Of a DNA stretch of 64,000 nt, positions 143 through 14,400 are shown piece after piece (the stretch's first letter is position 1; each line of letters starts with the position of its first letter). The notes under the pieces are model-generated. The model was not told where the DNA came from. It made no database searches and saw nothing but the letters and a program-made list of their open reading frames with translations. Both the position numbers and the translations under genes were made by a program. Location of the stretch: positions 62,001 through 126,000 of IMG/VR virus record IMGVR_UViG_3300044641_009805; one strand, written 5' to 3'.

Positions 143-216
143 GCCGCTGTAGCTCAGACGGATAGAGCAGATCATTCCTAACGATCAGGCCACAGGTTCG
201 ACTCCTGTCAGCGGTG
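143..216 (+). tRNA. tRNA-Arg (anticodon CCT)
   Basis: Acceptor GCCGCTG/CAGCGGT, D-arm GCTC/GAGC, anticodon loop TT-CCT-AA (175-181) with one A-C mismatch closing the stem, T-loop TTCGACT; CCA not encoded. Confidence 0.9.
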
Positions 217-249
217 CAAAGTTAACCTCAAACAAGGTAAGGTAGAACC

Positions 250-1092
250 ATGGACACGCAAGAGACGCTTCAACGGGCAGCTCAGCTATTGCGAGTAGCT
301 GACGCACTCATCATCACGGCTGGAGCAGGAATGGGGGTGGATAGCGGTCTGCCCGATTTCCGAGGAGATGAAGGTTTCTGGAACGCCTATCCGGCGTACA
401 AGCACCTTGGTCTCACCTTCTCCGACATGGCCAACCCGAGGTGGTTTGAGGATAACCCGGCGTTGGCATGGGGATTCTATGGTCACCGGCTCAACCTGTA
501 CCGAGCGACCCAACCTCACGCAGGCTTCGACGTTCTTAAGCGTCTTGCTCGAGGCATGAAGCATGGTGCCTTCGTCTTCACGTCTAACGTGGATGGTGCC
601 TTCCAGAAGGCTGGTTTCGACCCTGATCGTATCGTGGAATGCCATGGATCCATCCATCACGTCCAGTGTACAAAGGGATGTGGCATCGGCATTCTGCCTG
701 CAGAACGTGTTAAGATCGACGTGGATTCCAAGACGTTTGAGGCCCAGAGCCCGCTACCCGCCTGCCCGCGCTGCGGAGAGCTCTTGAGGCCAAACATCCT
801 GATGTTTGGCGATCCGGGATGGAATTTCTCTCGTGCCGATGAGCAAGACGAGAGGATGACGGAGTGGGTCCGGACCTTAGCAGATCGTCATGTCGCAACC
901 GTTGTCATCGAGTTGGGCGCAGGCAAACACATCCCCAGCGTGCGGGCGAAGAGTTCTTTGTTGTCAAACAAACTCAATGCTCCACTCATTCGCATCAATA
1001 CTCGAGATTCCGATGGTTTCCCCAATACGTTGTCGTTGCCGATGAAGGCAAAGGAGGCTCTCATCGAACTGGAAATCTTGTCAAAATCTTAA
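250..1092 (+). CDS. Sir2/CobB-family NAD-dependent deacylase
   Basis: GAGMGVDSGLPDFRG, TSNVDG, ECHGS, two Cys pairs, RPNILMFGD, ELGAG sirtuin motifs. Confidence 0.92.
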   Translation: MDTQETLQRAAQLLRVADALIITAGAGMGVDSGLPDFRGDEGFWNAYPAYKHLGLTFSDMANPRWFEDNPALAWGFYGHRLNLYRATQPHAGFDVLKRLARGMKHGAFVFTSNVDGAFQKAGFDPDRIVECHGSIHHVQCTKGCGIGILPAERVKIDVDSKTFEAQSPLPACPRCGELLRPNILMFGDPGWNFSRADEQDERMTEWVRTLADRHVATVVIELGAGKHIPSVRAKSSLLSNKLNAPLIRINTRDSDGFPNTLSLPMKAKEALIELEILSKS

Positions 1093-1183
1093 CACCACGC
1101 GGTGCAAACCTTAGACCCATCGTGATATACTGATTTCAACGCTGGCCACTAACCACAACCTCTTGACCTTGAAAGAAAAAGAA

Positions 1184-1375
1184 ATGAGCAACGAGAACAG
1201 CAACATCAGCACGGACACCTGCGACGACTGCGGACGACATGGCCCCGGGACACGTTACGTGCAGGACGACTCGACGACATACTTCATCTGCATGTCGTGT
1301 GGGCCAAAGCAATTCGAAAAGACCGCACGTCGGGACATCGACTCATGGCTGGCAGGAGGTGACTTCGGGGGATGA
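1184..1375 (+). CDS. Small Zn-finger-like hypothetical protein
   Basis: CDDC...CMSC; ATG at 1184 downstream of promoter copy 1103. Confidence 0.65.
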   Translation: MSNENSNISTDTCDDCGRHGPGTRYVQDDSTTYFICMSCGPKQFEKTARRDIDSWLAGGDFGG

Positions 1376-1626
1376 GCTGGAATTACCGAGTTGTCCGCAA
1401 GATCCTCTCTGGTGAAGGATACACCACAACTCAGTACGGAATCCATGAGGTCTACTACGATGACGATCACGTACCGACTTCATGTACCGTCAACCCTGTC
1501 ACCCCTTATGGTGAGTCCGAGGACGAGTTGGCCCAAGACGTGCGGCATTACGCCTCGGCCTTGGAGAAGCCGGTTCTTGATTACGATTCGATCGGTGTAA
1601 AGTCAGAGTCGAACGTGGTAGAGTAG
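1372..1626 (+). CDS. Phage hypothetical protein (WNYRV...IHEVYY type)
   Basis: ATGA overlap with the upstream stop; similar to 2579-2839. Confidence 0.75.
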   Translation: MSWNYRVVRKILSGEGYTTTQYGIHEVYYDDDHVPTSCTVNPVTPYGESEDELAQDVRHYASALEKPVLDYDSIGVKSESNVVE

Positions 1627-1630
1627 AACC

Positions 1631-1765
1631 ATGAAGAACAAGAGGAAGCAAAACCCTATCGCCGTGGCCATGACTCTTCGACACGCCACGACGACAACCC
1701 GTATGAAGGATCGTCGTAACCGGCGCCCGAAGGACGCCCGCCACAAGGAGGACTGGTACAAGTAG
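1631..1765 (+). CDS. 44-aa basic peptide, leaderless (not in ORF track)
   Basis: ATG 6 nt after TAGAGT box; MKNKRKQNPIAVAMTLRHATTTTRMKDRRNRRPKDARHKEDWYK. Confidence 0.75.
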   Translation: MKNKRKQNPIAVAMTLRHATTTTRMKDRRNRRPKDARHKEDWYK

Positions 1766-1782
1766 ACCCAACGGGTTTACCA

Positions 1783-2082
1783 TTGGCGCAGCAGAGATAC
1801 ATTGCGGCAATGGCACGAAAGAAGAAGCAAGAGGCACAAGATAAGCAAGCCTCGATAATCGAGATTCAAATACCGGAAGCAAAGATGGTTCCTGCAAATC
1901 AAGTGGTGCCTGGACAGGTCGTCAAAATTCCAGGCGGTGAGTTTCACAAGGTCGTATCTGTGGATCCCATCCTCGACCCGTCTCACCCTCAGCTCTGGGG
2001 CAATGAAGTCATTGCCAGGGTACAAGATGGCGGGGGAACGAAGCTGGTGATCCTGAAGGGACGGGTCGAACTAGCGGCTTGA
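1783..2082 (+). CDS. Hypothetical protein
   Basis: ORF fills the gap co-directionally; start uncertain. Confidence 0.55.
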   Translation: MAQQRYIAAMARKKKQEAQDKQASIIEIQIPEAKMVPANQVVPGQVVKIPGGEFHKVVSVDPILDPSHPQLWGNEVIARVQDGGGTKLVILKGRVELAA

Positions 2083-2093
2083 TCCTGACACCC

Positions 2094-2172
2094 GGATGAC
2101 CCAGGAGAGGTTTTTAGCAAATCATGGAAGGTTACCAAGGGGTGGCTTTTCGTAACCTCTCCTGGGTCATCC
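2094..2172. repeat. 79-bp palindromic element, copy 1
   Basis: GGATGACCCAGGAGAGG-N45-CCTCTCCTGGGTCATCC with GGTTACC (2130-2136) on the dyad axis. Confidence 0.95.
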
Positions 2173-2214
2173 TCAGGTAGTGTAAAGTCTCAAGGAAAGT
2201 GATATATTAAGACC

Positions 2215-2493
2215 ATGACCGAGGTTCTTGAGTCGATTCCGATTGATCCCATCGTAGAACACCCGACGGATGACATCGCAGCTGGGCCTCTACTTGAGAT
2301 CATGTTCGAAGGAGTTTGGATCCTGGCAGAGGAGGACGTGTTCGGGTGTTGGACTGGGTTGCGGAGGAAGAACGGCGAAGAGATCCATGGGTCGATCTAT
2401 CCTCTCGGGGGGAAGACGTTCTACACAGGTTCTCGGGTCTGCGGGTGCAAGGCATGTCAGGAACATGTGGAGGCGAAGTTCAAGAAGAACTGA
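2215..2493 (+). CDS. Hypothetical protein, leaderless
   Basis: ATG 6 nt after TATATT box; C-terminal CGCKAC. Confidence 0.75.
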   Translation: MTEVLESIPIDPIVEHPTDDIAAGPLLEIMFEGVWILAEEDVFGCWTGLRRKNGEEIHGSIYPLGGKTFYTGSRVCGCKACQEHVEAKFKKN

Positions 2494-2495
2494 TC

Positions 2496-2582
2496 ATGGA
2501 TGAGATGACATTTGGCGACAAAGTTCTGGCTGTTCTCACCATCGGCATCGTGCTGATGGTCTTCGCGATGGAGTTGAAATGA
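2496..2582 (+). CDS. 28-aa single-TM peptide
   Basis: MDEMTFGDKVLAVLTIGIVLMVFAMELK; tightly coupled to both neighbours. Confidence 0.55.
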   Translation: MDEMTFGDKVLAVLTIGIVLMVFAMELK

Positions 2583-2839
2583 AGTCAGACCAACGCATCG
2601 TGAGGCAGATCCTTCCATCAGGTGCCACCTACGATGGTATCTATGAGGTCTACTATGATGAGGAAGGTAGACCTACATCCAGGGCCACTCAACTGTCTAC
2701 TCTCCTCGCCCCAACAACAAAGGCTCTTGTCATAGGACTGAGCGACATGAGACGGGCTTTTGATCGACCTATCTTGCTCGAGGTGAACGATGAACAAGGA
2801 AGATTCGTAGAGATATCTACACAAGGAGACATGACATGA
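2579..2839 (+). CDS. Hypothetical protein, paralog of 1372-1626
   Basis: YDGIYEVYYDEEGRPT vs YGIHEVYYDDDHVPT; AFDRPIL vs ALEKPVL. Confidence 0.7.
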   Translation: MKSDQRIVRQILPSGATYDGIYEVYYDEEGRPTSRATQLSTLLAPTTKALVIGLSDMRRAFDRPILLEVNDEQGRFVEISTQGDMT

Positions 2840-3057
2840 CGACATTCTACAACCAAGAAAAAGCAGCGCTGCTCCAGGCTTTCGTTGCAATCCTCAATGA
2901 TGCAGAGGCCATCCTAGACAAGATCGAAGCCCTTGACATCACGCACAAAGGAGAACCTGATCACGATCATCTGGCTCTGAACGACCTGGTGGCCGACGCC
3001 ATCGAACTCGCGGAGGGGCTACGCGACGCCGCAGACAGCGTCAAAGAAGGAATCTAA
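2836..3057 (+). CDS. Hypothetical helical protein
   Basis: AGGAG SD and ATGA overlap. Confidence 0.7.
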   Translation: MTTFYNQEKAALLQAFVAILNDAEAILDKIEALDITHKGEPDHDHLALNDLVADAIELAEGLRDAADSVKEGI

Positions 3058-3065
3058 CCAAGCGG

Positions 3066-3284
3066 TTGGAAGATACCTTAGACCTGCACGGGGTGTCTCA
3101 TGAGGATGCCTCTGAAATGGTCCACAGGTTCATCAATGATCATTGGGTAGAAGGGTGGACCCTTCACGTCATCACGGGAAACTCTACGAAGATGAAGTCC
3201 ATCGTTCAATCCGTCCTGAACCTGTATCAGGTCGACTGGATTGATGACGAATGGAACGCTGGCAGCATCAAGATTTTTACATAG
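3066..3284 (+). CDS. Stand-alone Smr (small MutS-related) domain protein
   Basis: LDLHGVS.EDA...LHVITGNS...NAGSI Smr signature; TTG start. Confidence 0.8.
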   Translation: MEDTLDLHGVSHEDASEMVHRFINDHWVEGWTLHVITGNSTKMKSIVQSVLNLYQVDWIDDEWNAGSIKIFT

Positions 3285-3324
3285 CTTGTTGTAAAGTCAC
3301 TGAAACAAATGATAGGGTATAATC

Positions 3325-3537
3325 ATGCGGATCTTGCCGACAGACAACGTCGACCTGACGTACTACTCTTCTTCACATCTTAGGTCGATCGGCGAAGCTC
3401 TTGTCGAACGTTTGAAGAAGGGTCAGGTAAGCCTGGTCGGGCTAGATCAAGCTGCTCTAGCGGCTGCAAAATCAGGGATGCCGACACTCCGCGATGTTCT
3501 CAGGTTGAAGGAGGCCTGCAGGCTTGCGGGGGTGTGA
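3325..3537 (+). CDS. Hypothetical protein, leaderless
   Basis: ATG 6 nt after TAGGGT box of copy 3290. Confidence 0.7.
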   Translation: MRILPTDNVDLTYYSSSHLRSIGEALVERLKKGQVSLVGLDQAALAAAKSGMPTLRDVLRLKEACRLAGV

Positions 3538-3803
3538 CAGTGGCGTGGATTGATGACCATAGGATCCTGTTCATCTTCAGAACGGCCATGGAATCATTGA
3601 AGAGAGGAGATGAGGCCTCAGCTCAGTTCTATCTGAAACAAATCCCCCCAGAACAAATGGAGTATGTTTGGGGTCTTGTATCCCAGGCGACGGGTCGACC
3701 CATCCATGAACTTCGTAAACCTTGGTGGAAACGCCACATCAAACTGTTCGTTTCGGGGTTTGTGATTCTTGGAACCATTCTTTACTATACCACACGAGGG
3801 TAA
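3534..3803 (+). CDS. Hypothetical protein with C-terminal TM
   Basis: GTGA overlap; hydrophobic LFVSGFVILGTILYY. Confidence 0.65.
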   Translation: MTVAWIDDHRILFIFRTAMESLKRGDEASAQFYLKQIPPEQMEYVWGLVSQATGRPIHELRKPWWKRHIKLFVSGFVILGTILYYTTRG

Positions 3804-4025: not shown

Positions 4026-4026
4026 T

Positions 4027-4251
4027 ATGCAAACGATGACGTCATGCTGGGTGATTCGCACCAAAAATGGTGTTCGAGGTGGACAAGAATTCGTCTACTG
4101 GAACCTTAATGAGGGTTGGGTCTACGATCCAATGTTAGCGACTCGTTATGCAGACGAAGCGGAGGCCTGCGGGTCGATTGCAAACTATGCTGCGAACGGG
4201 TTGTTTCCAGAAAATGGTGTGTCCGCTGTGCAAATCTTCACGACGTCGTGA
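4027..4251 (+). CDS. Hypothetical protein
   Basis: ATG 1 nt after upstream stop; 3' end contains promoter copy 4229. Confidence 0.6.
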   Translation: MQTMTSCWVIRTKNGVRGGQEFVYWNLNEGWVYDPMLATRYADEAEACGSIANYAANGLFPENGVSAVQIFTTS

Positions 4252-4263
4252 TACAGTACGAAT

Positions 4264-4485
4264 GGGTCCATAAATGTGGTTGCGATGGTGACATCGATTC
4301 TGGTTCGAATCCAGATGGATCCCCTGGGATACAGGTCGTGGTAACTTGTAATCCTGACCAAACAATCGTTATGATTGTGGTCATTAGCGGCATGAAGGGC
4401 TGCCACGACAGGAAGCTGCCGATTAAGTAGGTGAACGGAGGACCTTCTTCCTCCATAGTAACTAACCCCGGGTTTCGGAGGAAAC
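4264..4485 (+). ncRNA. Candidate structured RNA: 5' tRNA-like module (4264-4323) plus multi-hairpin domain
   Basis: Starts exactly 6 nt after TACAGT box; acceptor GGGTCCA/TGGATCC, T-arm TCTGG-TTCGAAT-CCAGA, no D-stem, GNRA-capped CGATG/CATCG hairpin, then four more hairpins. Confidence 0.7.
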
Positions 4486-4486
4486 A

Positions 4487-5109: not shown

Positions 5110-5146
5110 GTGCAAATCTGCACCTGAACAAGATATAAACAGCATG

Positions 5147-5317
5147 ATGACTCGTGAGGAAATGAAGGCCGCGGCCGACTTCTTGAGGAAGTACGCCACT
5201 GCCGTGGAGACGAAGTTGTACTGGAACATGTCGACCAGTGAGGCGAAGGCTGAAATCAAGGAGGCCAAACATCTAGCAACGTTATTGGACGAGGCAGCAG
5301 AAAAAGAGTGCAACTAG
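5147..5317 (+). CDS. Small hypothetical protein
   Basis: ATG 5144 or 5147 just after TATAAA box. Confidence 0.65.
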   Translation: MTREEMKAAADFLRKYATAVETKLYWNMSTSEAKAEIKEAKHLATLLDEAAEKECN

Positions 5318-5351
5318 TTACACGCACGTGTACACGGGAGCGGTTTTTTGA

Positions 5352-5738: not shown

Positions 5739-5741
5739 AGC

Positions 5742-5933: not shown

Positions 5934-5987
5934 AAAAAAAGCGCGGGAGCAGTGCAAAGTTTGCGGAAGAAAGTGTATACTGGGACC

Positions 5988-6176
5988 ATGGACCACGTCA
6001 AGAAGCTCACGGTCGTCGACGCAGACAACTCCCGCGAGTACCGCATCGAGGTGGAAGAGGGCCCGCTGCCTTACACGACGCGGATCGTGTTCGGGCCAAG
6101 CTTCTCGATCACCCTCCAGAACGAGGACGTCGCGACGCTCGCTCAGCTTCTCATGCAGGCTTCTTCGGACGTCTGA
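5988..6176 (+). CDS. Hypothetical protein, leaderless
   Basis: ATG 6 nt after TATACT (5976-5981). Confidence 0.75.
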   Translation: MDHVKKLTVVDADNSREYRIEVEEGPLPYTTRIVFGPSFSITLQNEDVATLAQLLMQASSDV

Positions 6177-6230
6177 AAAAAGTTCTCCACCCGGTGCAAA
6201 GTTCCACTTCGAAAATGTATATATAGGATC

Positions 6231-6593
6231 ATGAACAGCATCAAGTACGTGGCCATCCTCAACGACACCATCAAGACCCTCCGACTCAATGTCGATCCGG
6301 CGCAGCTGAACCACCTGCGTGCCGCCGCCGCGGAGATCGACCAACTCCGTGGAGAGGTCGCCGACCTCGCCTTCGGCCTGTCGAAACGGCTCGCCGCCTA
6401 CGCGGCCGACATCGACGCTGGCCGCACCAGCGTCGAGCTACCTACCGCGTCGATGAAGGGTGCGAACGACCTTCTCTTCATGCAAAAGAAGAACGACGCC
6501 CTCCTGCGAAAAGCCGAGGGCTTCCCGCTCCTCCTCACCGGGGCTCTCGGTTTCGAAGCCGAGAAGAAGTTCTTCGAACTCATCCGGGGCTGA
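6231..6593 (+). CDS. Hypothetical protein, paralog of 13595-13957
   Basis: Promoter copy 6195; AAAEIDQLR...KRLAAYAADIDAGRT...FFELIRG. Confidence 0.8.
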   Translation: MNSIKYVAILNDTIKTLRLNVDPAQLNHLRAAAAEIDQLRGEVADLAFGLSKRLAAYAADIDAGRTSVELPTASMKGANDLLFMQKKNDALLRKAEGFPLLLTGALGFEAEKKFFELIRG

Positions 6594-6647
6594 AAAAAAG
6601 TTCTCCCCTCGGTGCAAAGTTCTACCTCGAAAAGGTATACTGAAGCC

Positions 6648-6920
6648 ATGAACACCTTCCCGATCATCCTCGACGGTTCGAAGTTCGACTGGTACAACGC
6701 CTCCGCCGCGCACGGCATGGGATCGATCAGCGATCATCCTGGCTTCCCGCAGTCCGGCTGGGCACCGGGTCAGGTCGCGGTCCGCAGCCACCGTACGGGC
6801 AAGGTGGTGGCCTTCAAGTTCGTCGAGATCGCCAACGACGGCGAGGGCAACGTCAGCCTCAACTACGAGGGCACTCTCCCCGACGGCCGCTACTGCGCAC
6901 TTTCTCTCGCGGTCGGCTGA
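6648..6920 (+). CDS. Hypothetical protein, leaderless
   Basis: ATG 6 nt after TATACT (6636-6641). Confidence 0.75.
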   Translation: MNTFPIILDGSKFDWYNASAAHGMGSISDHPGFPQSGWAPGQVAVRSHRTGKVVAFKFVEIANDGEGNVSLNYEGTLPDGRYCALSLAVG

Positions 6921-6961
6921 GGGCAGTGCAAAGTCAACCTCAGGTAAGGTAAGGTAGAACC

Positions 6962-7192
6962 ATGAAGCGAAACTCCTCTCCCAAGTCGAAGGTTCTCGAG
7001 CTGGCTTCCTTCTGCGTCTCGGAAGGCACACCCCTCGAGGTCCGCAGCACCCGCATCAAGGGGCGGTTCGGTGGCGACTTCCTCGTCGAGGTCGACGCGG
7101 GCACTCAGGTCTTGGCCCGAGCCCGCCACCGCAACTGGCGCACGGCCTACAAGCTTCTCGGCATCGAACTGTCACGCCGGGGTGTCGCCTGA
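6962..7192 (+). CDS. Hypothetical protein, leaderless
   Basis: ATG 6 nt after TAAGGT. Confidence 0.75.
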   Translation: MKRNSSPKSKVLELASFCVSEGTPLEVRSTRIKGRFGGDFLVEVDAGTQVLARARHRNWRTAYKLLGIELSRRGVA

Positions 7193-7228
7193 GTGCAAAG
7201 CGCACGGTGAATGAGGTAAGATAGAACC

Positions 7229-7960
7229 ATGGACGCCACACCCCGGATCGAAGCCCTCCGCACCGCTAAGGCCATCATCGGCTCTCACGGTGTGGTTGCG
7301 CACATGAACAAGTACAACCGAGAAGTCCTCGCTCGGGAGGTGACCGAGGGATCGACGGGGATGCGGTGCGACTTCAACCTGGACCCCGCTCGCAGCGCCT
7401 GGCACGAGTCCAACCCGTCGGTCACGTTGGTGGTCGCCTACAATGCGGACCCGAAGGGGGCACAGCTCAATGATGAAGGTGCCATGGTGCTAGAAAACTA
7501 CCTACGTATCGCCGTGGGGACTTCAGGCGGCGACATGGACCTAGAGACGCTGAAGCAGCGGGAAAGCATGGTCTCGATGGTTGCCATGCTGGGAGAAATG
7601 CTGACAACGACGTTGCCCCAGAAGATCACGTTGACCATGGAGTCACCCGCTCAGGTGGTCGAGAGGACACAACGCCAGCACGAGCAGTTCGTTGGCAAGC
7701 AAATCTACGACAACCTCGGTGAGGCGGCCTTCAAGGGCCTCCGCGTCGATGGCTCAGGCCGATTCGTACGCCTCACTTCCACCTACGCTTCTGTGGCCGG
7801 AAAGTACCCGGATTCTGGGACCTACCGGTTCCGTCACGTCCGTCGAGTTGACCGTAGGGGTTGCCCCAAGGAAGTCGCCAACTATTCGATCCGGGTGTTC
7901 GGGTGTGGAGACGGTAGCCTCCCTCCTTCGGTCGCGATTCATCGCATCAAGGCAGTGTAA
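7229..7960 (+). CDS. Hypothetical protein, leaderless
   Basis: ATG 6 nt after TAAGAT; its TAA lies inside the next TGTAAA box. Confidence 0.8.
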   Translation: MDATPRIEALRTAKAIIGSHGVVAHMNKYNREVLAREVTEGSTGMRCDFNLDPARSAWHESNPSVTLVVAYNADPKGAQLNDEGAMVLENYLRIAVGTSGGDMDLETLKQRESMVSMVAMLGEMLTTTLPQKITLTMESPAQVVERTQRQHEQFVGKQIYDNLGEAAFKGLRVDGSGRFVRLTSTYASVAGKYPDSGTYRFRHVRRVDRRGCPKEVANYSIRVFGCGDGSLPPSVAIHRIKAV

Positions 7961-7990
7961 AGTTCCTCAGAGAGGTGATAGAGTAGAACC

Positions 7991-8017
7991 ATGGAAACGA
8001 TCAAGATCGGCATCTGA
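7991..8017 (+). CDS. 8-aa leaderless upstream ORF METIKIGI
   Basis: ATG at the canonical position 6 nt after TAGAGT; TGA at 8015-8017. Confidence 0.45.
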   Translation: METIKIGI

Positions 8018-8055
8018 CCCAATCCACCCGCCAACCTTCCGCCCAGGAGAACTAC

Positions 8056-8451
8056 ATGTCGACTCGCTCTTTCATCGGAATCCAGAATCTCGACGGCACG
8101 GTCACCGGCGTCTACTGCCACCATGATGGATATCTCGACGGCGTCGGAGCGACCCTCAAGGCCCACTACACGACGGTCCGCCAGGTGCTCGACCTCGTGG
8201 CGCTCGGCTCGTTGTCCTCTCTCCATGAGGACCTCGACTACACGCAGGCCTACCATCGTGACCGTGGTGATGACCTCGACATCTCCACCTACGACTCCCC
8301 TGTTGACATCAGCTTCGACGACGGAGGCTACGAGTTCGTCTACCTCTTCCGGCCGTCGGATGAGCGAGGATCGACCTATAGCTGGCACTACGCAGACCGT
8401 GAGGTCTTCGGCAAAGGTCCCGAGTTCAAGCCCCTCGCCTTCGCGGTGTAA
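8056..8451 (+). CDS. Conserved phage hypothetical protein (STRS.IG...YCHHDGY type)
   Basis: AGGAG SD; motif I recognise from other phages, function unknown. Confidence 0.8.
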   Translation: MSTRSFIGIQNLDGTVTGVYCHHDGYLDGVGATLKAHYTTVRQVLDLVALGSLSSLHEDLDYTQAYHRDRGDDLDISTYDSPVDISFDDGGYEFVYLFRPSDERGSTYSWHYADREVFGKGPEFKPLAFAV

Positions 8452-8481
8452 AGTCAACCCCCAACAAGATAAGGTAACAAC

Positions 8482-8724
8482 ATGACACGACGAGTTACGA
8501 ACAAGCTTCTCGAGATGATGGAAGAGGGCGCCTTGGATGCCGAGGTGCTGGTGAGGGCCTGCCTGACCTTCATGTCGGAGGCCGACGTGGCCGAGATGGC
8601 CGTGGGTGAGGGGTTCCTCGAGGAGGAGGACGCAGAGATCGACGAGGACGAAGATGAGGATGAGGTAGGCGAGGATGATGAGGAGGAAGAGCCCCTCTCA
8701 ACCTTCGGGGTGGACGACGACTGA
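8482..8724 (+). CDS. Highly acidic small protein, leaderless
   Basis: C-terminal D/E tract EEEDAEIDEDEDEDEVGEDDEEEE. Confidence 0.8.
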   Translation: MTRRVTNKLLEMMEEGALDAEVLVRACLTFMSEADVAEMAVGEGFLEEEDAEIDEDEDEDEVGEDDEEEEPLSTFGVDDD

Positions 8725-8776
8725 AAAAGTGCGGGCGGCGGTGCAAAGTCCTGTGTGATCGTGGTAGATTGGAACC

Positions 8777-9520
8777 ATGCCGATCATCAAGAAGAGCTAC
8801 GCCTACGGTCCCGGCCCCTCCACGTCGGAGGTGTACTTCCAGCACCGCGTCCTGCGGATCGAGAAGACCACGGAGACCCGCAACTGGTCGGACACGCTCG
8901 ACTACTCGGACCACCGCTCGACGGAGTGCACCTGGGCCCTCGTGTGGCTCGGTACCCGCGGCGTTCCAGCCCGCGATGCCCACTACGCCGGCGGTCGCAC
9001 CGTCGCCTACTTCGACGCCCTCAAGTGGGACGCCGACAAGATCCGCGACCTCGAGGTCCACGAGCAGTTTGCCTGGGTGGATTGCACCAACCTCTTCGTG
9101 GATCGTAACGGCTACTCGCTGGTGCCTTCGGTCGATCCTTTCGACATGCAGCTCCTCCACGGCGGTCCGGAGATGATCGAGGGGCTCGCGGTCTGGGAGG
9201 CCTACCACACGGCTCGGATCGCCCGTGCGGAGGCGGAACGGATGGCCAAGGTCGCCGAAGCTGCTGCCCAGGTCGCCGCCGAGAAGGCGAAGAGGGATGC
9301 CCGCCAAGCAAAGCGAGATGCCAAGCTCCAGGCCGAGAAGGCGGTGGCTGAGGGTCAGTTGGCCCGGATCCCCGCCAAGGGCACCACGGTCACGGTCGAT
9401 GGGTTCACCGGCAAGGTCTTCTGGATCGGTGTCTCCAAGTACCGCGGCAAGTGGAATGCCCGGGCAGGGGTGAAGGACCCCAAAGGGAACGTCCAGTGGG
9501 TCCCGGCAGATAAGTTCTGA
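8777..9520 (+). CDS. Hypothetical protein with Ala/Lys coiled coil and C-terminal beta domain
   Basis: ATG 6 nt after TAGATT; GC3-rich codon pattern. Confidence 0.8.
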   Translation: MPIIKKSYAYGPGPSTSEVYFQHRVLRIEKTTETRNWSDTLDYSDHRSTECTWALVWLGTRGVPARDAHYAGGRTVAYFDALKWDADKIRDLEVHEQFAWVDCTNLFVDRNGYSLVPSVDPFDMQLLHGGPEMIEGLAVWEAYHTARIARAEAERMAKVAEAAAQVAAEKAKRDARQAKRDAKLQAEKAVAEGQLARIPAKGTTVTVDGFTGKVFWIGVSKYRGKWNARAGVKDPKGNVQWVPADKF

Positions 9521-9537
9521 CCCTCGTCCCACCCCCA

Positions 9538-9616
9538 GGATGACCCAGGAGAGGTTCCTGAAACTGGGGGTGGGGTAACCTAGGTCGAATTGTCCTAGGC
9601 CTCTCCTGGGTCATCC
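9538..9616. repeat. 79-bp palindromic element, copy 2
   Basis: Same 17-bp arms (extendable to 21 bp, 9534-9620), N45, GGTAACC (9574-9580) on the dyad axis. Confidence 0.95.
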
Positions 9617-9682
9617 TGGGTGACCTGAGAAAAAGTGCCCATGTCGGTGCAAAGTTCCACCGGGAAAGGGTATACTGGGACC

Positions 9683-9769
9683 ATGAAGAACGCCGCCGCT
9701 GACATCCTCGGAGCCATCGTCACCGTCGCCACCACGGCCTTCGCGGCCTGGTGGATGATGGCCGCCTGA
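9683..9769 (+). CDS. 28-aa hydrophobic peptide, leaderless (not in ORF track)
   Basis: MKNAAADILGAIVTVATTAFAAWWMMAA; own promoter copy 9648. Confidence 0.7.
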   Translation: MKNAAADILGAIVTVATTAFAAWWMMAA

Positions 9770-9809
9770 ACCCGGTGCAAAGTCACCCATGACAAGATAT
9801 ATACTTGTC

Positions 9810-10136
9810 ATGAAACTGACCACGAAACAGCTAAGAAGCTTGATCAACGAAGTCCTTGAAGAAGAAGGAGTGACACCGGCCATGACCACCGACCAACTCA
9901 AGGAGATCGCGGCGGAACTCACCAAGGCGGAGAAGGCGGCCTTCCTCAACGCCCGGCCTTACCCCCCGGATGGTCGGGTCCAACTGCCTTCGGGCCGGGT
10001 CCTCGACGTCGGCTCTTGGGAAGCCGCCATGGAACTCAACACCCTCGTCATGTTGCCGCAGAAGAAGATCGGAACAGGCCGAGGTGGTCTGAAGGGTCGC
10101 CCGGCCTGGCTGAAAAAAGCGCTCGGCTACTACTGA
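9810..10136 (+). CDS. Hypothetical protein with MKLT..QLR.LI.E N-terminal motif
   Basis: MKLTTKQLRSLINEVLEEE; promoter copy 9776. Confidence 0.8.
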   Translation: MKLTTKQLRSLINEVLEEEGVTPAMTTDQLKEIAAELTKAEKAAFLNARPYPPDGRVQLPSGRVLDVGSWEAAMELNTLVMLPQKKIGTGRGGLKGRPAWLKKALGYY

Positions 10137-10175
10137 GCGGTGCAAAGTCAACCTCGAACAGGATAAGGTAGAACC

Positions 10176-10397
10176 ATGGACAACATCAAGATCTTCGTGG
10201 TGCAGCAGGGTGCAATGTCCTATTCCAACGTCGACGAGGTCACCTACGTGTTCCTCAACGAGGCGGACGCTCGGGTCAAGTACGCGTACCTCCTCGAGAA
10301 CCGGGTGGTCGAGTGCGACTCTTACGACAGGACCTGGACTTCCCTCCACGCGGTGACTCCTGGCGACGAGGTGTCGCAGGACAACAAGATCGCCTGA
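10176..10397 (+). CDS. Hypothetical protein, leaderless
   Basis: Promoter copy 10141. Confidence 0.75.
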   Translation: MDNIKIFVVQQGAMSYSNVDEVTYVFLNEADARVKYAYLLENRVVECDSYDRTWTSLHAVTPGDEVSQDNKIA

Positions 10398-10433
10398 GTG
10401 CAAAGTCAACCTCGAACAGGATAAGGTAGAACC

Positions 10434-10751
10434 ATGAACATCATCGAGTACGTCTCCGGCGGCCGTAGGTACCGGGCCACCCTCGTCCCTGGGAAGCACA
10501 TCATCGTGGAGTGCTTCCGGGATGATCAGTTCGTCTCCATGCGGAAGTTCGAGGTCGGCGATGTGGCCGAGTACGACTCCTTCAACCTCCGCTACACCGC
10601 GCCCATCGTCTCCATCGGCAAGTCCACGGTCACGTTCAATGTGTACGACAGCAAGAGGCGCCTCAAGGCTGAGAACTTCGCCTGGCGCAATTGGAACTTC
10701 AACGCCGAGGAGATCGCCCGTCGGAACGCGGAGACGAGCCAGCACATCTGA
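10434..10751 (+). CDS. Hypothetical protein, leaderless
   Basis: Promoter copy 10399 (identical to 10141). Confidence 0.8.
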   Translation: MNIIEYVSGGRRYRATLVPGKHIIVECFRDDQFVSMRKFEVGDVAEYDSFNLRYTAPIVSIGKSTVTFNVYDSKRRLKAENFAWRNWNFNAEEIARRNAETSQHI

Positions 10752-10792
10752 ACCCGGTGCAAAGTTCGACCGTGATAGGGTATACTAGGACC

Positions 10793-11035
10793 ATGAACAA
10801 GTTCGATGCTTTCGCGGCCAAGGCGAAGATCCTCGGGGAGATGCTGGAGACCGTCGGCAAGCTGCGGGACTCCGACCTGGAGAAGCTCGTGGCGCCGATG
10901 GAAGGCATGACGGTGTGGTCCCACGACGATGTTGAGTCGCTGACTGACTCGATCAACCACCTCTTCGAGGAGCTGATGATGCTCCAGGAAGAACTCCAGT
11001 CCTTCACCAGCCCGGCTGAGAGGTCGAGTGGCTGA
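10793..11035 (+). CDS. Hypothetical protein, leaderless
   Basis: ATG 6 nt after TATACT (10781-10786). Confidence 0.75.
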   Translation: MNKFDAFAAKAKILGEMLETVGKLRDSDLEKLVAPMEGMTVWSHDDVESLTDSINHLFEELMMLQEELQSFTSPAERSSG

Positions 11036-11039
11036 CCCA

Positions 11040-11117
11040 GGATGACCCAGGAGAGGCCCTGAGAATTCCCGGTGGGGTAACCTCCGCCTCGAACCTCCGG
11101 CCTCTCCTGGGTCATCC
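11040..11117. repeat. 78-bp palindromic element, copy 3
   Basis: Same 17-bp arms, N44, GGTAACC at 11076-11082. Confidence 0.95.
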
Positions 11118-11174
11118 TCGAGGGAGTGCAAGGGGACGGTGCAAAGTTCCACCGGAGAGGGATAAGATGGACCC

Positions 11175-11705
11175 ATGACAGTGATATCGTGGATCGCCCT
11201 CCTCGTCGCCATAGTGGCCCTTGCTGACTCGCAAGAGACTCGAGCACGCCTCAAGACACTCAGCCGCATCCCCGGTCCACGAGGGCTCCGAGGTCTACGT
11301 GGGGCGCCAGGACCGAGAGGAGAGGCCGGAGAGGTAGGCCCATGTGGCCCACCAGGACCCCAAGGTGAAACAGGTCCCCAAGGAACCCCAGGCATTCCTG
11401 GGCCAAAGGGAGACCCAGGAGACGGTGGGCCAATGGGACCCCAAGGCCCGACAGGGGAAGCAGGACCCAAGGGTGAGACCGGTCTAACGGGTGACCAGGG
11501 TCCAAGCGGCCCAACAGGTCCCCAGGGTCCTCGAGGTGAGGCAGGACCGACCGGACCCCAAGGTGATATGGGACCACCTGGCCCACGGGGAGAAGTGGGA
11601 CCTAGAGGTCCCCAGGGCTTCAAGGGTGAGTCCAGCGGACCGGCCGAACGGGAACTCCTCGCCCATTGGGCCCACGAGGCACTGAAGCCCCGAGGCGAAG
11701 AATGA
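11175..11705 (+). CDS. Membrane-anchored collagen-like protein
   Basis: N-terminal hydrophobic [14 protein letters not shown] followed by a long uninterrupted Gly-X-Y tract. Confidence 0.85.
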
Positions 11706-11751
11706 CACGAGATCGGTGCAAAGTCACCCCTGAATAGGGTATACTGGGACC

Positions 11752-11949
11752 GTGAAGATCATCTACCTGTTGTTCAGCGACGTGACCTTCGGGACCCACG
11801 AGCACGGCTTCATCCCGCGCAAAGTCGTTCAGGATCCGGACGACGAGGACGCCCGCTACGAGCGCCACCTGAAGTCCAAGGGCATCAATGCCCGTGTGTA
11901 CGACGGCAAGGTGAAGCTCCTTGAGCCCGGGGAAAAGTTCACGATCTGA
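11752..11949 (+). CDS. Hypothetical protein, leaderless (GTG)
   Basis: GTG 6 nt after TATACT. Confidence 0.7.
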   Translation: MKIIYLLFSDVTFGTHEHGFIPRKVVQDPDDEDARYERHLKSKGINARVYDGKVKLLEPGEKFTI

Positions 11950-11985
11950 GTGCAAAGTTCAACCTCGAAAGGATATACTAGGATC

Positions 11986-12213
11986 ATGAACAACGCAATC
12001 CAACCCGGCGATCGAGTCATCCTCTCCCCCGTCAACGGCCTCGGGTGCAGTGCCTTCCTCGTCCTGGAGGTCGACCCCAACGTGCATCCGACCCACCGCC
12101 TCTACGTCGAAGGCCGGAATGGCCAGCGCTGGTGGGCCCGGATCGAGGGAGCGCGGATCCTCCCGGAGGAACCTGAGGGGAACTTCACCTCGAGCCGTCA
12201 CGGCGATTGGTGA
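11986..12213 (+). CDS. Hypothetical protein, leaderless
   Basis: ATG 6 nt after TATACT. Confidence 0.75.
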   Translation: MNNAIQPGDRVILSPVNGLGCSAFLVLEVDPNVHPTHRLYVEGRNGQRWWARIEGARILPEEPEGNFTSSRHGDW

Positions 12214-12267
12214 GAAAAAGCCCTCCATCCGGTGCAAAGTCAACCCCGAACGAGGTAAGGTAGAACC

Positions 12268-12462
12268 ATGGACACCGCATTCGAAGTCTTCATCTCCGAC
12301 ACCATCCATGGCACCTCCGACCGTCGGGCATACAAGACCCGGGAGCGGGCCGTGGCTCGGTACGAGGAGCTGACGCGGAACCACAAACGCAATGGCCACT
12401 CCGCCGTGATCCTCCGCCAGGGCAAAGCACAGATCTTCCCGGCACCGATCTGCGGCCGCTGA
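12268..12462 (+). CDS. Hypothetical protein, leaderless
   Basis: ATG 6 nt after TAAGGT. Confidence 0.75.
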   Translation: MDTAFEVFISDTIHGTSDRRAYKTRERAVARYEELTRNHKRNGHSAVILRQGKAQIFPAPICGR

Positions 12463-12498
12463 GTGCAAAGTTCACAGAGGAAAGGATATACTAGGACC

Positions 12499-12714
12499 AT
12501 GAAGAACATCATCACCCTCCTCAACGACGGCGAGACCTTCACCTCCGCGGAGGGCACCTCGGTCTGCTTCCTCTCCGACGACGACGTGGATCTCCTCGCC
12601 TCGGGTGAACGCACCATCGACGAGCTGGTCGGTGCCGTGGGCCGGCGACGGTACGACCTCACCAACCCGGCCCACCTCCGCCTCCTCGCGGACCGGCTCG
12701 AAAAGAACCGCTGA
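12499..12714 (+). CDS. Hypothetical protein, leaderless
   Basis: ATG 6 nt after TATACT. Confidence 0.75.
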   Translation: MKNIITLLNDGETFTSAEGTSVCFLSDDDVDLLASGERTIDELVGAVGRRRYDLTNPAHLRLLADRLEKNR

Positions 12715-12753
12715 CCGGTGCAAAGTTCGACTCCGAAAGGATATACTAAGACC

Positions 12754-12936
12754 ATGAAGATCTCCCGCGCCCAAATGACCTTCGACCGCAACAAGGACGC
12801 CGTGGGCATCCACCTCACCCTCGACGACGCGAAGCGGATCCGGGCAGCCTTGAGCGACCTGGACGGGGAAGACCTGGACAACTACGGCGGGATCCTCGAA
12901 CGCCTGCGGAAGGCCATTCCCCAACAGTGGGGCTGA
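12754..12936 (+). CDS. Hypothetical protein, leaderless
   Basis: ATG 6 nt after TATACT. Confidence 0.75.
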   Translation: MKISRAQMTFDRNKDAVGIHLTLDDAKRIRAALSDLDGEDLDNYGGILERLRKAIPQQWG

Positions 12937-12988
12937 AAAAGTTCACCCCTCGGTGCAAAGTTCGACCCCGAAAGGATAAGGTAGAACC

Positions 12989-13174
12989 ATGGACGCCAAA
13001 CACATCGCCCAGCTCATCGCCCAGGTGACCGACCTCCTCACCGCGGGGAAGATCGACCACGAGATGCAGGCCAACCTCACCGCCTCCCTCTGGGAGCTGG
13101 CGGCGCGGAAGGACCTCCGCGAGGAGGTGACGGAAATCCTTCGCCAGGACGCCCTCGAAGAGATGGGGGTGTGA
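12989..13174 (+). CDS. Hypothetical protein, leaderless
   Basis: ATG 6 nt after TAAGGT. Confidence 0.75.
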   Translation: MDAKHIAQLIAQVTDLLTAGKIDHEMQANLTASLWELAARKDLREEVTEILRQDALEEMGV

Positions 13175-13242
13175 CGGGGACCCTCTGAAAAAAAAGCCTC
13201 GGGGCGGTGCAAAGTTCCACCGGGAAAAGGTATACTAAGACC

Positions 13243-13521
13243 ATGGAAAACATCTCCAAGGGTTTCAAAAGCTGGCAAGGCATCGCTCGGATTCCGTCGG
13301 CGGACAATGCCGTCCAAATCTGGGATCTCATGGCAGCCGACTGGACCTACCACAAGGACAACTTTCCGGACCGCGTCCCGGCCGGGTTCGAAAACTGCTC
13401 CTTTGAGGACCTCGAGTTCACCTCCCATCCCCGCAAGGACCGTCTCCTGGCTCGGCCGGCCGGCACCAAAATCCCCTTCCACATCTGGCGGGGAGCCCTC
13501 CAAGGCTTCAATACAAAGTGA
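13243..13521 (+). CDS. Hypothetical protein, leaderless
   Basis: ATG 6 nt after TATACT. Confidence 0.75.
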   Translation: MENISKGFKSWQGIARIPSADNAVQIWDLMAADWTYHKDNFPDRVPAGFENCSFEDLEFTSHPRKDRLLARPAGTKIPFHIWRGALQGFNTK

Positions 13522-13527
13522 CCGGTT

Positions 13528-13556
13528 GGGGGAGGACCTTCGGGTCCTCCCCCTTT
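13528..13556 (+). terminator. Intrinsic terminator-like hairpin
   Basis: GGGGGAGGACC-TTCG-GGTCCTCCCCC-TTT (cUUCGg loop) just after a stop. Confidence 0.8.
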
Positions 13557-13594
13557 CCGTGCAAAGTTCCCACCAGAAAAGGTACACTGAGACC

Positions 13595-13957
13595 ATGAAG
13601 AACCCCGGCAAGGGCGAGTCCACCCTGGCCACCACCATCCAGTCACTCGGCCTCGAGGCACACATGGACAAGGCCAACTTCCTCGAACTCCGTGAGGCGG
13701 CCTACACGATCGACCGCCTCCGTGCCGACCTCACCGACTGCTCTCGGCTCATGGCGAAACGTCTCACCTCCTTCGCGGATGACATCGCCGATGGCCGCAC
13801 TCACATGTCTCCCCCCACGGGCAGCTCCCTCCTCGACGACATCACGGAGAAGACCGCGGTGCTCAATGAGAAGACCTCGGCCTTCCCCACCCTCCTCCGC
13901 CTCGTGCTCGGCCCCGACGGGTCGAAGGAGTTCTTCCGGATCCTCCGCGGAGTGTGA
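13595..13957 (+). CDS. Hypothetical protein, paralog of 6231-6593
   Basis: ATG 6 nt after TACACT; AAYTIDRLR...KRLTSFADDIADGRT...FFRILRG. Confidence 0.8.
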   Translation: MKNPGKGESTLATTIQSLGLEAHMDKANFLELREAAYTIDRLRADLTDCSRLMAKRLTSFADDIADGRTHMSPPTGSSLLDDITEKTAVLNEKTSAFPTLLRLVLGPDGSKEFFRILRGV

Positions 13958-14007
13958 AGCTCCACCTCGTCAGCAGCTGACACGCGGGAGGATGATATAT
14001 ATCCTCC

Positions 14008-14395: not shown

Positions 14396-14400
14396 ACTAC

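What the first reader, a model, noticed from the sequence alone, without database searches (positions are those of the whole stretch)
215..13597. Array of about 29 single-gene promoters that put the start codon at +1 (leaderless early programme)
Seen: TG(C/T)AAA-N17-TANNNT recurs 29 times. In about 25 copies ATG/GTG follows the -10-like box after exactly 6 nt (AGAACC, GGGACC, AGGACC, AAGACC), leaving no room for a normally spaced Shine-Dalgarno. Known: sigma70-type promoters initiate about 7 nt downstream of the -10 box. Inference: nearly every small gene here is transcribed as its own leaderless mRNA from a non-canonical -35 (TGCAAA rather than TTGACA). The early genes would then be independent of SD-led initiation and possibly resistant to host translation shut-off. 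Many late genes in the window do carry SD motifs, so the phage would use two initiation modes.
Basis: partly seen in the sequence, partly recalled or inferred. Interest (0 to 1): 0.85.

Follow-up and report, generated by a model that had tools for sequence, protein, structure and literature searches.

The report
Leaderless promoter-gene cassette array in phage
A large uncultivated T4-like phage carries about 29 near-identical promoter-like boxes, 25 of them placed so that transcription should begin on the A of the start codon of one small gene. This combines two known things, T4-type promoter cassettes and leaderless mRNAs, on an unusual scale, but it has not been confirmed by experiment.

Summary
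TGYAAA-N17-TANNNT occurs 27 times in the window against 1.7 expected, and 25 copies lie on the + strand between 215 and 13588. With four spacing or hexamer variants there are 29 boxes. In 25 of them ATG (24) or GTG (1) follows the hexamer after exactly 6 nt. The ORFs run to the next box and show coding periodicity (GC1/2/3 = 0.63/0.44/0.80). The geometry matches a sigma70-family promoter with +1 on the A of AUG: invariant T-12, A-11 and T-7, G at -14, a 17-bp spacer, and C at -1 before A at +1. This is the arrangement validated for leaderless genes in Deinococcus. It is conserved in a family of 200-300 kb T4-like phages from metagenomes: 242 of 286 independent boxes have the start codon at the same offset. 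Homology blocks between relatives begin and end at the boxes, so these are shuffling single-gene cassettes like T4-type PeSLs, mostly without the stem-loop. No experiment supports initiation at these sites. The host, the "early" timing and any resistance to shut-off remain unknown. Only about a quarter of late genes have a Shine-Dalgarno motif. The array also differs sharply from the late genes in codon composition (GC3 0.80 against about 0.3). Verdict: a real feature and a new variant of known kinds.

The parts
215..252 (+). box 1: TGCAAA-N17-TAAGGT-AGAACC-ATG; gene 250-1092 (Sir2-family, 280 aa)
   Evidence: the -35 box overlaps the 3' end of tRNA-Arg 143-217
1103..1131 (+). box 2: TGCAAA-N17-TATACT with no adjacent start; 52-nt leader to gene 1184-1375
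1596..1633 (+). box 3: TGTAAA/TAGAGT, 6 nt, ATG; gene 1631-1765 (44 aa)
   Evidence: upstream gene 1372-1626 ends inside the box
2181..2217 (+). box 4: N16 variant, TATATT, 6 nt, ATG; gene 2215-2493
   Evidence: preceded by hairpin 2094-2172
3290..3327 (+). box 5: TGTAAA/TAGGGT, ATAATC, ATG; gene 3325-3537
4229..4257 (+). box 6: TGCAAA/TACAGT followed by a non-coding conserved structured RNA candidate (about 4264-4480)
5111..5149 (+). box 7: TGCAAA/TATAAA, ATG at 4 nt and again at 7 nt; gene 5144-5317
   Evidence: atypical spacing
5953..5990 (+). box 8: TATACT-GGGACC-ATG; gene 5988-6176
   Evidence: A-tract at about -50
6195..6233 (+). box 9: TATATA, 7 nt, ATG; gene 6231-6593 (paralogue of 13595-13957)
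6613..6650 (+). box 10: TATACT-GAAGCC-ATG; gene 6648-6920
   Evidence: homology block with L015 starts here
6927..6964 (+). box 11: TAAGGT-AGAACC-ATG; gene 6962-7192
7194..7231 (+). box 12: TAAGAT-AGAACC-ATG; gene 7229-7960 (243 aa)
   Evidence: 1 nt after the previous stop
7956..8017 (+). box 13 plus leaderless 8-codon mini-ORF 7991-8017; SD-led gene 8056-8451 follows
   Evidence: a homologue in L027 is fused directly to a box
8447..8484 (+). box 14: TGTAAA (holds the stop TAA of gene 8056-8451)/TAAGGT; gene 8482-8724
8742..8779 (+). box 15: TAGATT-GGAACC-ATG; gene 8777-9520 (247 aa)
9648..9685 (+). box 16: TATACT-GGGACC-ATG; gene 9683-9769 (28 aa, hydrophobic)
   Evidence: preceded by hairpin 9538-9616
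9776..9812 (+). box 17: N16 variant, TATATA-CTTGTC-ATG; gene 9810-10136
10141..10178 (+). box 18: TAAGGT-AGAACC-ATG; gene 10176-10397
   Evidence: identical over 38 nt to box 19
10399..10436 (+). box 19: gene 10434-10751
   Evidence: block 10397-10800 shared with L009 and L012
10758..10795 (+). box 20: TATACT-AGGACC-ATG; gene 10793-11035
11140..11177 (+). box 21: TAAGAT-GGACCC-ATG; gene 11175-11705 (collagen-repeat protein)
   Evidence: preceded by hairpin 11040-11117
11717..11754 (+). box 22: TATACT-GGGACC-GTG (the only GTG); gene 11752-11949
11951..11988 (+). box 23: TATACT-AGGATC-ATG; gene 11986-12213
12233..12270 (+). box 24: gene 12268-12462
12464..12501 (+). box 25: gene 12499-12714
   Evidence: single-cassette block in L044
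12719..12756 (+). box 26: gene 12754-12936
12954..12991 (+). box 27: gene 12989-13174
13208..13245 (+). box 28: gene 13243-13521
   Evidence: A8 tract upstream
13560..13597 (+). box 29: TACACT-GAGACC-ATG; gene 13595-13957
   Evidence: terminator-like hairpin 13527-13556 lies directly upstream
13993..14010 (+). possible 30th leaderless start without the TGCAAA box: TGa-TATATA, 6 nt, ATG; gene 14008-14295
   Evidence: read from the sequence; not tested further
2094..2172 (+). 79-nt hairpin element with invariant 17-nt arms, copy 1 (copies 2 and 3 at 9538-9616 and 11040-11117), each just 5' of a box

Best explanation
The region is the hyperplastic, small-gene part of a large (at least 278 kb) uncultivated T4-like phage. 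It is built from single-gene cassettes.

Each cassette begins with a promoter of about 38 bp of sigma70-family architecture:
- a -35-like box G-TGCAAAGT;
- a 17-bp spacer with G at -14;
- a -10 hexamer TANNNT;
- a purine-rich discriminator ending in CC.
The A of the start codon is the seventh base after the hexamer. RNA polymerase holoenzyme is therefore expected to start on that A and make an mRNA with no 5' leader. That mRNA would be translated by direct 70S/initiator-tRNA binding to a 5'-terminal AUG instead of Shine-Dalgarno pairing.

Most cassettes have no terminator, so nested read-through transcripts are expected. On those, a downstream gene has no usable ribosome site, so its output depends on its own promoter.

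The conserved boxes also act as homology for recombination. Whole promoter-plus-gene units are gained, lost and reordered between related phages, as with T4-type PeSL cassettes.

Shown here: the motif, its geometry, coding of the ORFs, conservation across a phage family, and breakpoints at the boxes. Inferred: promoter activity, the position of +1, leaderless translation, early timing and use of the host sigma.
For: Enrichment and strand bias.

Start codon exactly 6 nt after the hexamer in 25 of 29 boxes, ATG in 24 of those 25.

Conservation profile anchored only on TGCAAAGT: T-12, A-11 and T-7 are invariant, positions -10 to -8 are free, G is at -14, ACC at -3 to -1, and 3-nt periodicity follows the ATG.

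In related phage contigs:
- 266 of 286 unique boxes have TANNNT at N17, and 242 of 286 have the start codon at the same offset (239 ATG).
- Among boxes not selected by the search pattern the figures are 96 of 116 and 72 of 116.
- The offset distribution has 328 of 419 at 6 nt and 7 each at 5 and 7 nt.

No SD: 2 of 24 box-linked starts against 8 of 16 internal genes.

Coding: GC1/2/3 = 0.63/0.44/0.80. ORFs end -5 to +19 nt from the next box in most cases. Orthologues diverged to 50-60% amino-acid identity still keep the box.

One gene family is found both fused to a box (L027) and SD-led (window 8056-8451).

Homology blocks with L015, L009, L012, L044 and L032 begin and end at boxes, and gene order differs.

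Experimental precedent: in D. radiodurans, TANNNT 6-7 bp before an ORF is the -10 element of leaderless genes, and a -35 placed 17 bp upstream boosts it (PMC12340547). High-GC phyla show TAnnnT with uninformative middle positions (PMC3160421).
Against: There are no transcript-end, promoter-activity or ribosome data. The one attempt to find transcript-like contigs starting at an ATG found only DNA contigs.

The -35-like box matches TTGACA in only 3 of 6 positions and is conserved over 9-10 nt, longer than a normal -35 hexamer. It may be read by something other than the host primary sigma.

The host is unknown, so its capacity for leaderless translation is unknown. The only cultured-phage homologues of an array protein are in T4-like phages of Vibrio, cyanobacteria and Caulobacter, hosts not known for heavy leaderless use.

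Four of 29 boxes do not abut an ORF at 6 nt.

Part of the motif's similarity could be identity by descent through cassette duplication (boxes 18 and 19 are identical).
Confidence: 0.7

Rival explanations
1. The promoter and leaderless geometry are the same, but the boxes form a phage-factor-dependent (middle-type) class, not host-sigma early promoters. The 9-10 nt box G-TGCAAAGT would be bound by a phage activator, in the way the T4 MotA box replaces the -35. Alternatively the promoters are read by host core polymerase carrying the phage's own RpoD-like sigma.
For: The box is longer and better conserved than a -35 hexamer, and the -10 is only TANNNT, as in T4 middle promoters. The canonical promoter scan does not see these sites. 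The window encodes an RpoD/RpoS-like sigma (16902-17735) whose sequence stops inside the region 4.2 recognition helix, and it has no Pfam region-4 hit.
Against: The box is not the MotA box (TGCTTtA, 11-13 bp from the -10). No MotA or AsiA domain appears among 45 small proteins of the window. A sigma without region 4.2 would be expected to serve promoters that need no -35, not ones with a strong -35-position box. The sigma gene lies downstream on the same strand and could itself be fed by read-through from the array. T4 early promoters are also conserved beyond the hexamers.
Confidence: 0.2
2. The repeat acts at the RNA level on polycistronic transcripts. It would be a processing site or a translation signal that exposes or marks the AUG, not a promoter.
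For: Few terminators lie between cassettes, so long transcripts containing the repeat are likely. The ACC-AUG junction is highly conserved.
Against: The conserved positions are those read by sigma region 2 on DNA (T-12, A-11, T-7), with a partner box at 17 bp. No base-pair covariation is seen within the repeat. No SD-like element lies at a usable distance. The repeat is strictly on the coding strand and at a fixed distance.
Confidence: 0.06
3. The boxes are promoters, but transcription starts 2-5 nt upstream of the ATG, at one of the purines of RGRACC. The mRNAs would then be near-leaderless and not strictly leaderless.
For: Start-site choice can vary by a few bases. The discriminator is purine-rich. 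Two boxes have 4-nt or 7-nt gaps.
Against: The offset is held at exactly 6 nt in 328 of 419 family sites, with only 7 each at 5 and 7 nt. That argues for a constraint on the exact position of the A. C at -1 followed by A at +1 is the preferred start context.
Confidence: 0.1

Closest known systems
PeSL (promoter-early stem-loop) cassettes of T4-type phages (Arbiol et al. 2010, PMC2839356; Comeau et al. 2014, PMC4122927)
   Same: Both lie in a T4-like genome (gp23, gp20 and T4-type terminase). Both form a hyperplastic region of small ORFan genes, each flanked by a short conserved promoter motif. Indels, replacements and reordering between related phages have their breakpoints at the motifs.
   Different: The stem-loop/terminator half is absent from 25 of 29 boxes, and often only 1-19 nt separate the previous stop from the box. 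The -35 is non-canonical. The start codon is part of the cassette, so there is no leader and no SD. The array is GC3-rich while the rest of the genome is AT-rich. Mini-circle formation cannot be tested here.
Leaderless genes with a TANNNT -10 element 6-7 bp before the ORF in Deinococcus-Thermus and Actinobacteria (PMC12340547; PMC3160421; PMC4633059)
   Same: The same -10 signature with uninformative middle positions, the same 6-nt gap, AUG at +1, no SD, and a -35 at 17 bp.
   Different: Here the feature is in a phage, not a cellular genome. About 30 near-identical copies lie head to tail, with an unusual extended -35-like box. The host phylum is unknown.
Thermus phage phiYS40 leaderless transcripts (Sevostyanova et al. 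2007, J Mol Biol 366:420; cited in PMC12340547; the paper was not held, so details are from my own knowledge)
   Same: A large AT-rich myovirus (about 33% GC) of a GC-rich host that expresses many genes as leaderless mRNAs from promoters abutting the start codon.
   Different: As I recall, in phiYS40 it is the middle and late classes, which lack a -35, that are leaderless. Here the leaderless class has a strong -35-position box and covers the small-gene (presumed early) region. No sequence relationship was found.
Predicted leaderless SigA-like promoters of Cluster O mycobacteriophages (PMC4351075)
   Same: [quoted passage not shown]
   Different: There are three such promoters per genome, heading operons. 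They do not form an array of single-gene cassettes.
T4 early and middle promoters (PMC2988021; MotA box as quoted in PMC9004378)
   Same: Dozens of strong phage-specific promoter variants drive small pre-replicative genes, with A-tracts upstream of some of them.
   Different: T4 transcripts have leaders and SD sites. The box sequence and spacing differ from both the T4 early -35 and the MotA box.

Membership tests
sigma70-family promoter | -10 hexamer with conserved T-12, A-11 and T-7 | tested here: met
   The profile anchored on the upstream box alone shows these three positions near-invariant and -10 to -8 free.
sigma70-family promoter | -35 element related to TTGACA, 17 +/- 1 bp upstream | tested here: inconclusive
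   The spacing is 17 bp in 27 of 29 boxes and 16 bp in 2. The sequence TGCAAA matches the consensus in 3 of 6 positions, and the canonical scan misses the sites.
sigma70-family promoter | RNA polymerase initiates there | not testable with these tools
   No transcript data are available. The metagenome scan found only DNA contigs.
leaderless mRNA gene | -10 element 6-7 bp before the start codon, so that +1 is the first base of the codon | tested here: met
   25 of 29 boxes at 6 nt and 1 at 7 nt. In the family, 328 of 419 sites are at 6 nt. This is geometry only.
leaderless mRNA gene | no Shine-Dalgarno site; AUG strongly preferred | tested here: met
   SD-like duplex in 2 of 24. ATG in 24 of 25 in the window and in 239 of 242 in the family.
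leaderless mRNA gene | mapped primary 5' end at the start codon and translation from it | not testable with these tools
   This needs dRNA-seq or 5'-RACE plus ribosome profiling or toeprinting.
PeSL cassette of T4-type phages | conserved promoter motif between small genes in a hyperplastic region of a T4-like genome | tested here: met
PeSL cassette of T4-type phages | stem-loop terminator joined to the promoter | tested here: not met
   Only 4 of 29 boxes have an upstream hairpin: three 79-nt elements and one terminator-like hairpin. Most gaps are too short for one.
PeSL cassette of T4-type phages | breakpoints of indels and replacements between related phages lie at the motifs | tested here: met
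   blastn blocks with L015, L009, L012, L044 and L032 start and end at boxes.
PeSL cassette of T4-type phages | excised mini-circles | not testable with these tools
   This needs PCR or long reads on phage DNA.
T4 MotA-dependent middle promoter | MotA box TGCTTtA centred near -30, 11-13 bp from the -10; MotA and AsiA genes present | tested here: not met
   The box sequence and spacing differ. No MotA or AsiA domain is found in the window's small proteins, but only 64 kb of the genome was seen.

The most novel reading that the evidence does not exclude
This family of jumbo T4-like phages may run two separate expression compartments.

The first is a recombining array of dozens of single-gene, leaderless cassettes. 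They are GC3-rich (about 0.8) and matched to the host codon pool, and they would be switched on at injection from an unusual -35-type box.

The second is the AT-rich remainder of the genome (GC3 about 0.3). It uses SD or non-SD leaders, phage tRNAs and a phage sigma that lacks -35 recognition.

The infection programme would then switch promoter class, translation-initiation mode and codon/tRNA supply together. This could let the phage disable leader-dependent host translation early without harming its own first genes.
Probability: 0.25. Interest if true: 0.8.

Novelty: new variant of a known kind. Interest (0 to 1): 0.6.

Why it matters
If the boxes fire as predicted, this would be, to my knowledge and within the literature searched, the first T4-like phage group whose small-gene programme is expressed almost wholly from leaderless mRNAs. 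It would also be one of the densest natural arrays of leaderless genes, about one per 365 bp.

It offers about 30 natural variants of one compact 38-bp promoter-plus-start module for studying leaderless initiation. It shows that cassette shuffling can carry the translation start inside the mobile unit. It also points to a host, still unidentified, in which leaderless translation must be efficient.

The two-compartment codon usage makes a link between timing, tRNA supply and initiation mode testable.

Tried and rejected
- Nucleotide searches of the array against cultured phages found nothing (megablast; blastn). No cultured relative is available.
- Host identification by scanning species-representative genomes for the box. 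Multi-copy hits lie only on short contigs binned into MAGs of unrelated phyla: Chloroflexota, Bdellovibrionota, Proteobacteria and Acidimicrobiales. These are most likely mis-binned phage DNA and I did not accept them as host evidence. The single hits in Bacteroidales MAGs are palindromic divergent promoters unrelated to this phage.
- A hairpin inside the promoter spacer (TTCC..GGAA or TTCG..CGAA). Mutual-information and pairing tests over 268 boxes showed only a 1-nt register difference between two box subfamilies and no pairing signal. Rejected.
- Leaderless geometry for late genes. TANNNT lies 6-7 nt before 4 of 34 starts, about what AT-rich sequence gives by chance (reading). Not claimed.
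- Chimeric assembly as the cause of the GC jump. Rejected, because independent contigs from other samples carry both the array and the capsid genes, and all array loci of the family are GC-rich.
- Stop-codon recoding. Long standard-code ORFs fill the late region. The sigma ORF does not continue after its stop.
- Function of the cassette proteins. Among 45 small proteins there was one Pfam hit (Smr) and five PHROGs of unknown function.
- Search for transcript-like contigs beginning at an ATG. None found.

Full report
**What the window is**

The minus strand from 22.6 to 64 kb carries long standard-code ORFs. They include a T4 gp23-type major capsid protein (24442-26328), a gp20-type portal (31094-33082), a T4-type large terminase (33496-35139) and a helicase. 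The plus strand from 0.2 to 22.6 kb carries:
- small genes;
- a Sir2-family deacylase;
- a cytidine/dCMP-deaminase-like protein;
- a UvdE endonuclease;
- an RpoD-like sigma factor;
- an ATP-dependent ligase;
- two tRNAs.

The nearest cultured phages are distant: the capsid is 35-43% identical to Microcystis phage Mel-JY01 and Flavobacterium phage immuto. The same or a nearly identical genome is present in IMG/VR. The small proteins are 100% identical on the 278-kb contig 3300044641_009805, and the capsid is 100% identical on contigs from two other metagenomes.

**The observation**

TGYAAA-N17-TANNNT occurs 27 times against 1.67 expected, and 25 copies lie on the plus strand between 215 and 13588. 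Four variants (N16, or a hexamer ending in A) bring the total to 29.

In 25 boxes ATG (24) or GTG (1) follows the hexamer after exactly 6 nt. In 24 of them an ORF of 28-280 aa follows. The four exceptions are:
- a 7-nt gap (6195);
- a 4-nt gap, or 7 nt to a second ATG (5111);
- a leadered gene (1103);
- a box that drives a non-coding RNA candidate (4229).

The ORFs are real genes. GC at codon positions 1/2/3 is 0.63/0.44/0.80 in the 6-14.3 kb part. Most ORFs end between 5 nt inside and 19 nt before the next box. Orthologues in other contigs have diverged to 50-60% amino-acid identity while keeping the box.

**Anatomy of the box**

I anchored on the 8-mer TGCAAAGT alone and tabulated the flanks. 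The information profile is that of a sigma70-family promoter:
- a conserved block G-TGCAAAGT-y at the -35 position;
- a variable 17-bp spacer with G at -14;
- near-invariant T-12, A-11 and T-7, with free positions in between (TATACT, TAAGGT, TAGGAT, TAGAGT, TACACT and others);
- a purine-rich discriminator ending in CC;
- ATG, followed by 3-nt periodicity.

With six bases between the hexamer and the ATG, the A is the seventh base after the -10. That is the modal start position, and it sits in the preferred C(-1)A(+1) context (established knowledge).

About ten boxes also carry an A5-A8 tract near -50, merged with the TGA stop of the preceding gene. A standard TTGACA/TATAAT scan does not detect the array.

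SD-like pairing at a usable distance is found before 2 of 24 box-linked starts, 8 of 16 box-less genes in the same region, and 8 of 34 other genes.

**Conservation**

The box-plus-ATG pattern is found in 68 stretches of IMG/VR contigs, several from contigs of 211-298 kb. One of these also encodes a capsid 83% identical to the window's.

- Of 286 unique TGCAAAGT-anchored sites in those loci, 266 have TANNNT at N17 and 242 have a start codon at the exact offset (239 ATG).
- Among the 116 sites that do not match the search pattern, and so were not selected for it, the figures are 96 and 72.
- With a relaxed motif the gap is 6 nt in 328 of 419 sites and 5 or 7 nt in 7 each.

Such a tight constraint on one base position is what a requirement for +1 = A of AUG predicts. 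A leadered mRNA would not need it.

One gene family shows both solutions. In the window (8056-8451) it is SD-led, 65 nt behind a box that carries a conserved 8-codon mini-ORF. In locus L027 its homologue (42% identity, E = 5e-26) is fused directly to a box.

**Cassette behaviour**

Nucleotide homology between the window and five related loci comes in blocks whose ends coincide with boxes. Examples are 6612-9689, 8445-8749, 10397-10800, 12459-12737 and 12953-13251.

Gene order differs between phages, and one relative lacks ten consecutive cassettes. This is the behaviour described for PeSL cassettes in T4-type phages (PMC2839356, PMC4122927).

The terminator half of a PeSL is mostly missing here. 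Only four boxes are preceded by a hairpin, and no enrichment of terminators is seen.

**Interpretation**

The best-supported reading is an array of promoters that produce leaderless mRNAs, one per small gene in the 5.9-14 kb part. In the 0.2-5.9 kb part a box heads a short operon.

The strongest outside support is experimental work in D. radiodurans. There TANNNT 6-7 bp before an ORF is the -10 of leaderless genes, and a -35 at 17 bp enhances it (PMC12340547). A genome survey also found the TAnnnT form typical of high-GC phyla rich in leaderless genes (PMC3160421). Predicted leaderless promoters are known on a small scale in Cluster O mycobacteriophages (PMC4351075). From my own knowledge they are also known in Thermus phage phiYS40. 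PhiKZ has none (PMC8244752). I found no report of such an array in a T4-like phage.

**What remains open**

1. No transcript or ribosome data exist. A metagenome scan for contigs starting at an ATG found only DNA contigs.
2. Timing and the factor that reads the box are unresolved. The box is 9-10 nt long and non-canonical. The phage sigma aligns with RpoD through regions 1.2 to 4.1 but ends inside the 4.2 recognition helix, with no continuation after the stop. That sigma more plausibly serves promoters that need no -35, but a phage-dependent class for the boxes cannot be excluded.
3. The host is unknown.
4. The idea that leaderless starts protect against a shut-off of translation is untested.

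**Composition**

The array is a separate codon-usage compartment. GC3 values are:

| Genes | GC3 |
|---|---|
| 6-14.3 kb | 0.80 |
| 0.2-6 kb | 0.62 |
| UvdE | 0.68 |
| sigma | 0.56 |
| most late genes | 0.17-0.35 |
| major capsid gene | 0.59 |

Array loci of all relatives have 50-63% GC, against about 40% around the capsid genes. Independent assemblies span both parts. This is therefore a family trait and not a chimera.

That the most abundant late protein also has raised GC3 suggests, by inference, that GC-ending codons are the efficient ones in the host and that the rest of the genome drifts towards AT. GC-biased conversion in a recombination-hot region is an alternative.

**Verdict**

The mechanism is well supported by geometry and comparative evidence but not by experiment. 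The feature is a new variant of known kinds: T4-type promoter cassettes combined with leaderless gene architecture.

Noticed in passing
window 2094-2172, 9538-9616, 11040-11117; also L009, L010, L015, L020, L023, L032, L040, L044, L057, L064: A 79-nt hairpin element with exactly invariant 17-nt arms (GGATGACCCAGGAGAGG and its complement) and a variable 45-nt centre holding GGTGGGGTAACC. Each copy sits between a gene end and a box. The arms and the arm spacing are identical across related phages. It has no Rfam family. It could be a terminator, a processing site or a small mobile element.
   Followed up: partly
window 4264-4480 (behind box 4229): A conserved non-coding stretch with a predicted multi-hairpin structure. 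There are 8 compensatory pairs among only 3 sequences. Its 5' part looks tRNA-like, with an acceptor-type stem and a GGTTCGAATCC T-arm. ARAGORN and Rfam do not call it.
   Followed up: partly
window 5988-14295 against 22630-63768: Extreme codon-composition split within one phage genome: GC3 is 0.80 in array genes and 0.17-0.35 in most late genes, but 0.59 in the major capsid gene. Leu is mostly CTC and Ile is 94% ATC in the array; late genes use TTA and ATT/ATA.
   Followed up: partly
window 16902-17735: The phage RpoD/RpoS-like sigma factor (277 aa) ends inside the region 4.2 recognition helix. The frame does not continue after the stop. It starts with TTG behind a strong SD.
   Followed up: partly
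window 7991-8017: A leaderless 8-codon mini-ORF (METIKIGI) is conserved at the nucleotide level in several relatives. It lies ahead of an SD-led gene. In other phages the same first codons open a full-length gene, so it may be the remnant of a replaced cassette.
   Followed up: partly
window 14400-14640: A non-coding stretch rich in GGGGCC and AGGCCCCT repeats lies between the end of the array and the next genes. Its function is unknown.
   Followed up: no
L150, L153, L155, L159 (Bacteroidales MAG contigs): Palindromic divergent intergenic regions in which the Bacteroidetes-type -7 box TAACTTTG is read on both strands, with ATG 4 nt after the G on each side. This suggests divergent leaderless-type starts in Prevotellaceae and Porphyromonadaceae. 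They are unrelated to the phage family and were picked up only because the reverse complement of the -7 box resembles TGCAAAGT.
   Followed up: no
window 11175-11705: One cassette encodes a 176-aa protein with an N-terminal hydrophobic segment and collagen-type G-X-Y repeats (Pfam Collagen, E = 5.5e-20).
   Followed up: no
window 143-217: The 3' end of tRNA-Arg(CCT) overlaps the -35-like box of the first promoter. In two other cases (7956, 8447) the TAA stop of the upstream gene lies inside a TGTAAA box. This shows how tightly the cassettes are packed.
   Followed up: yes
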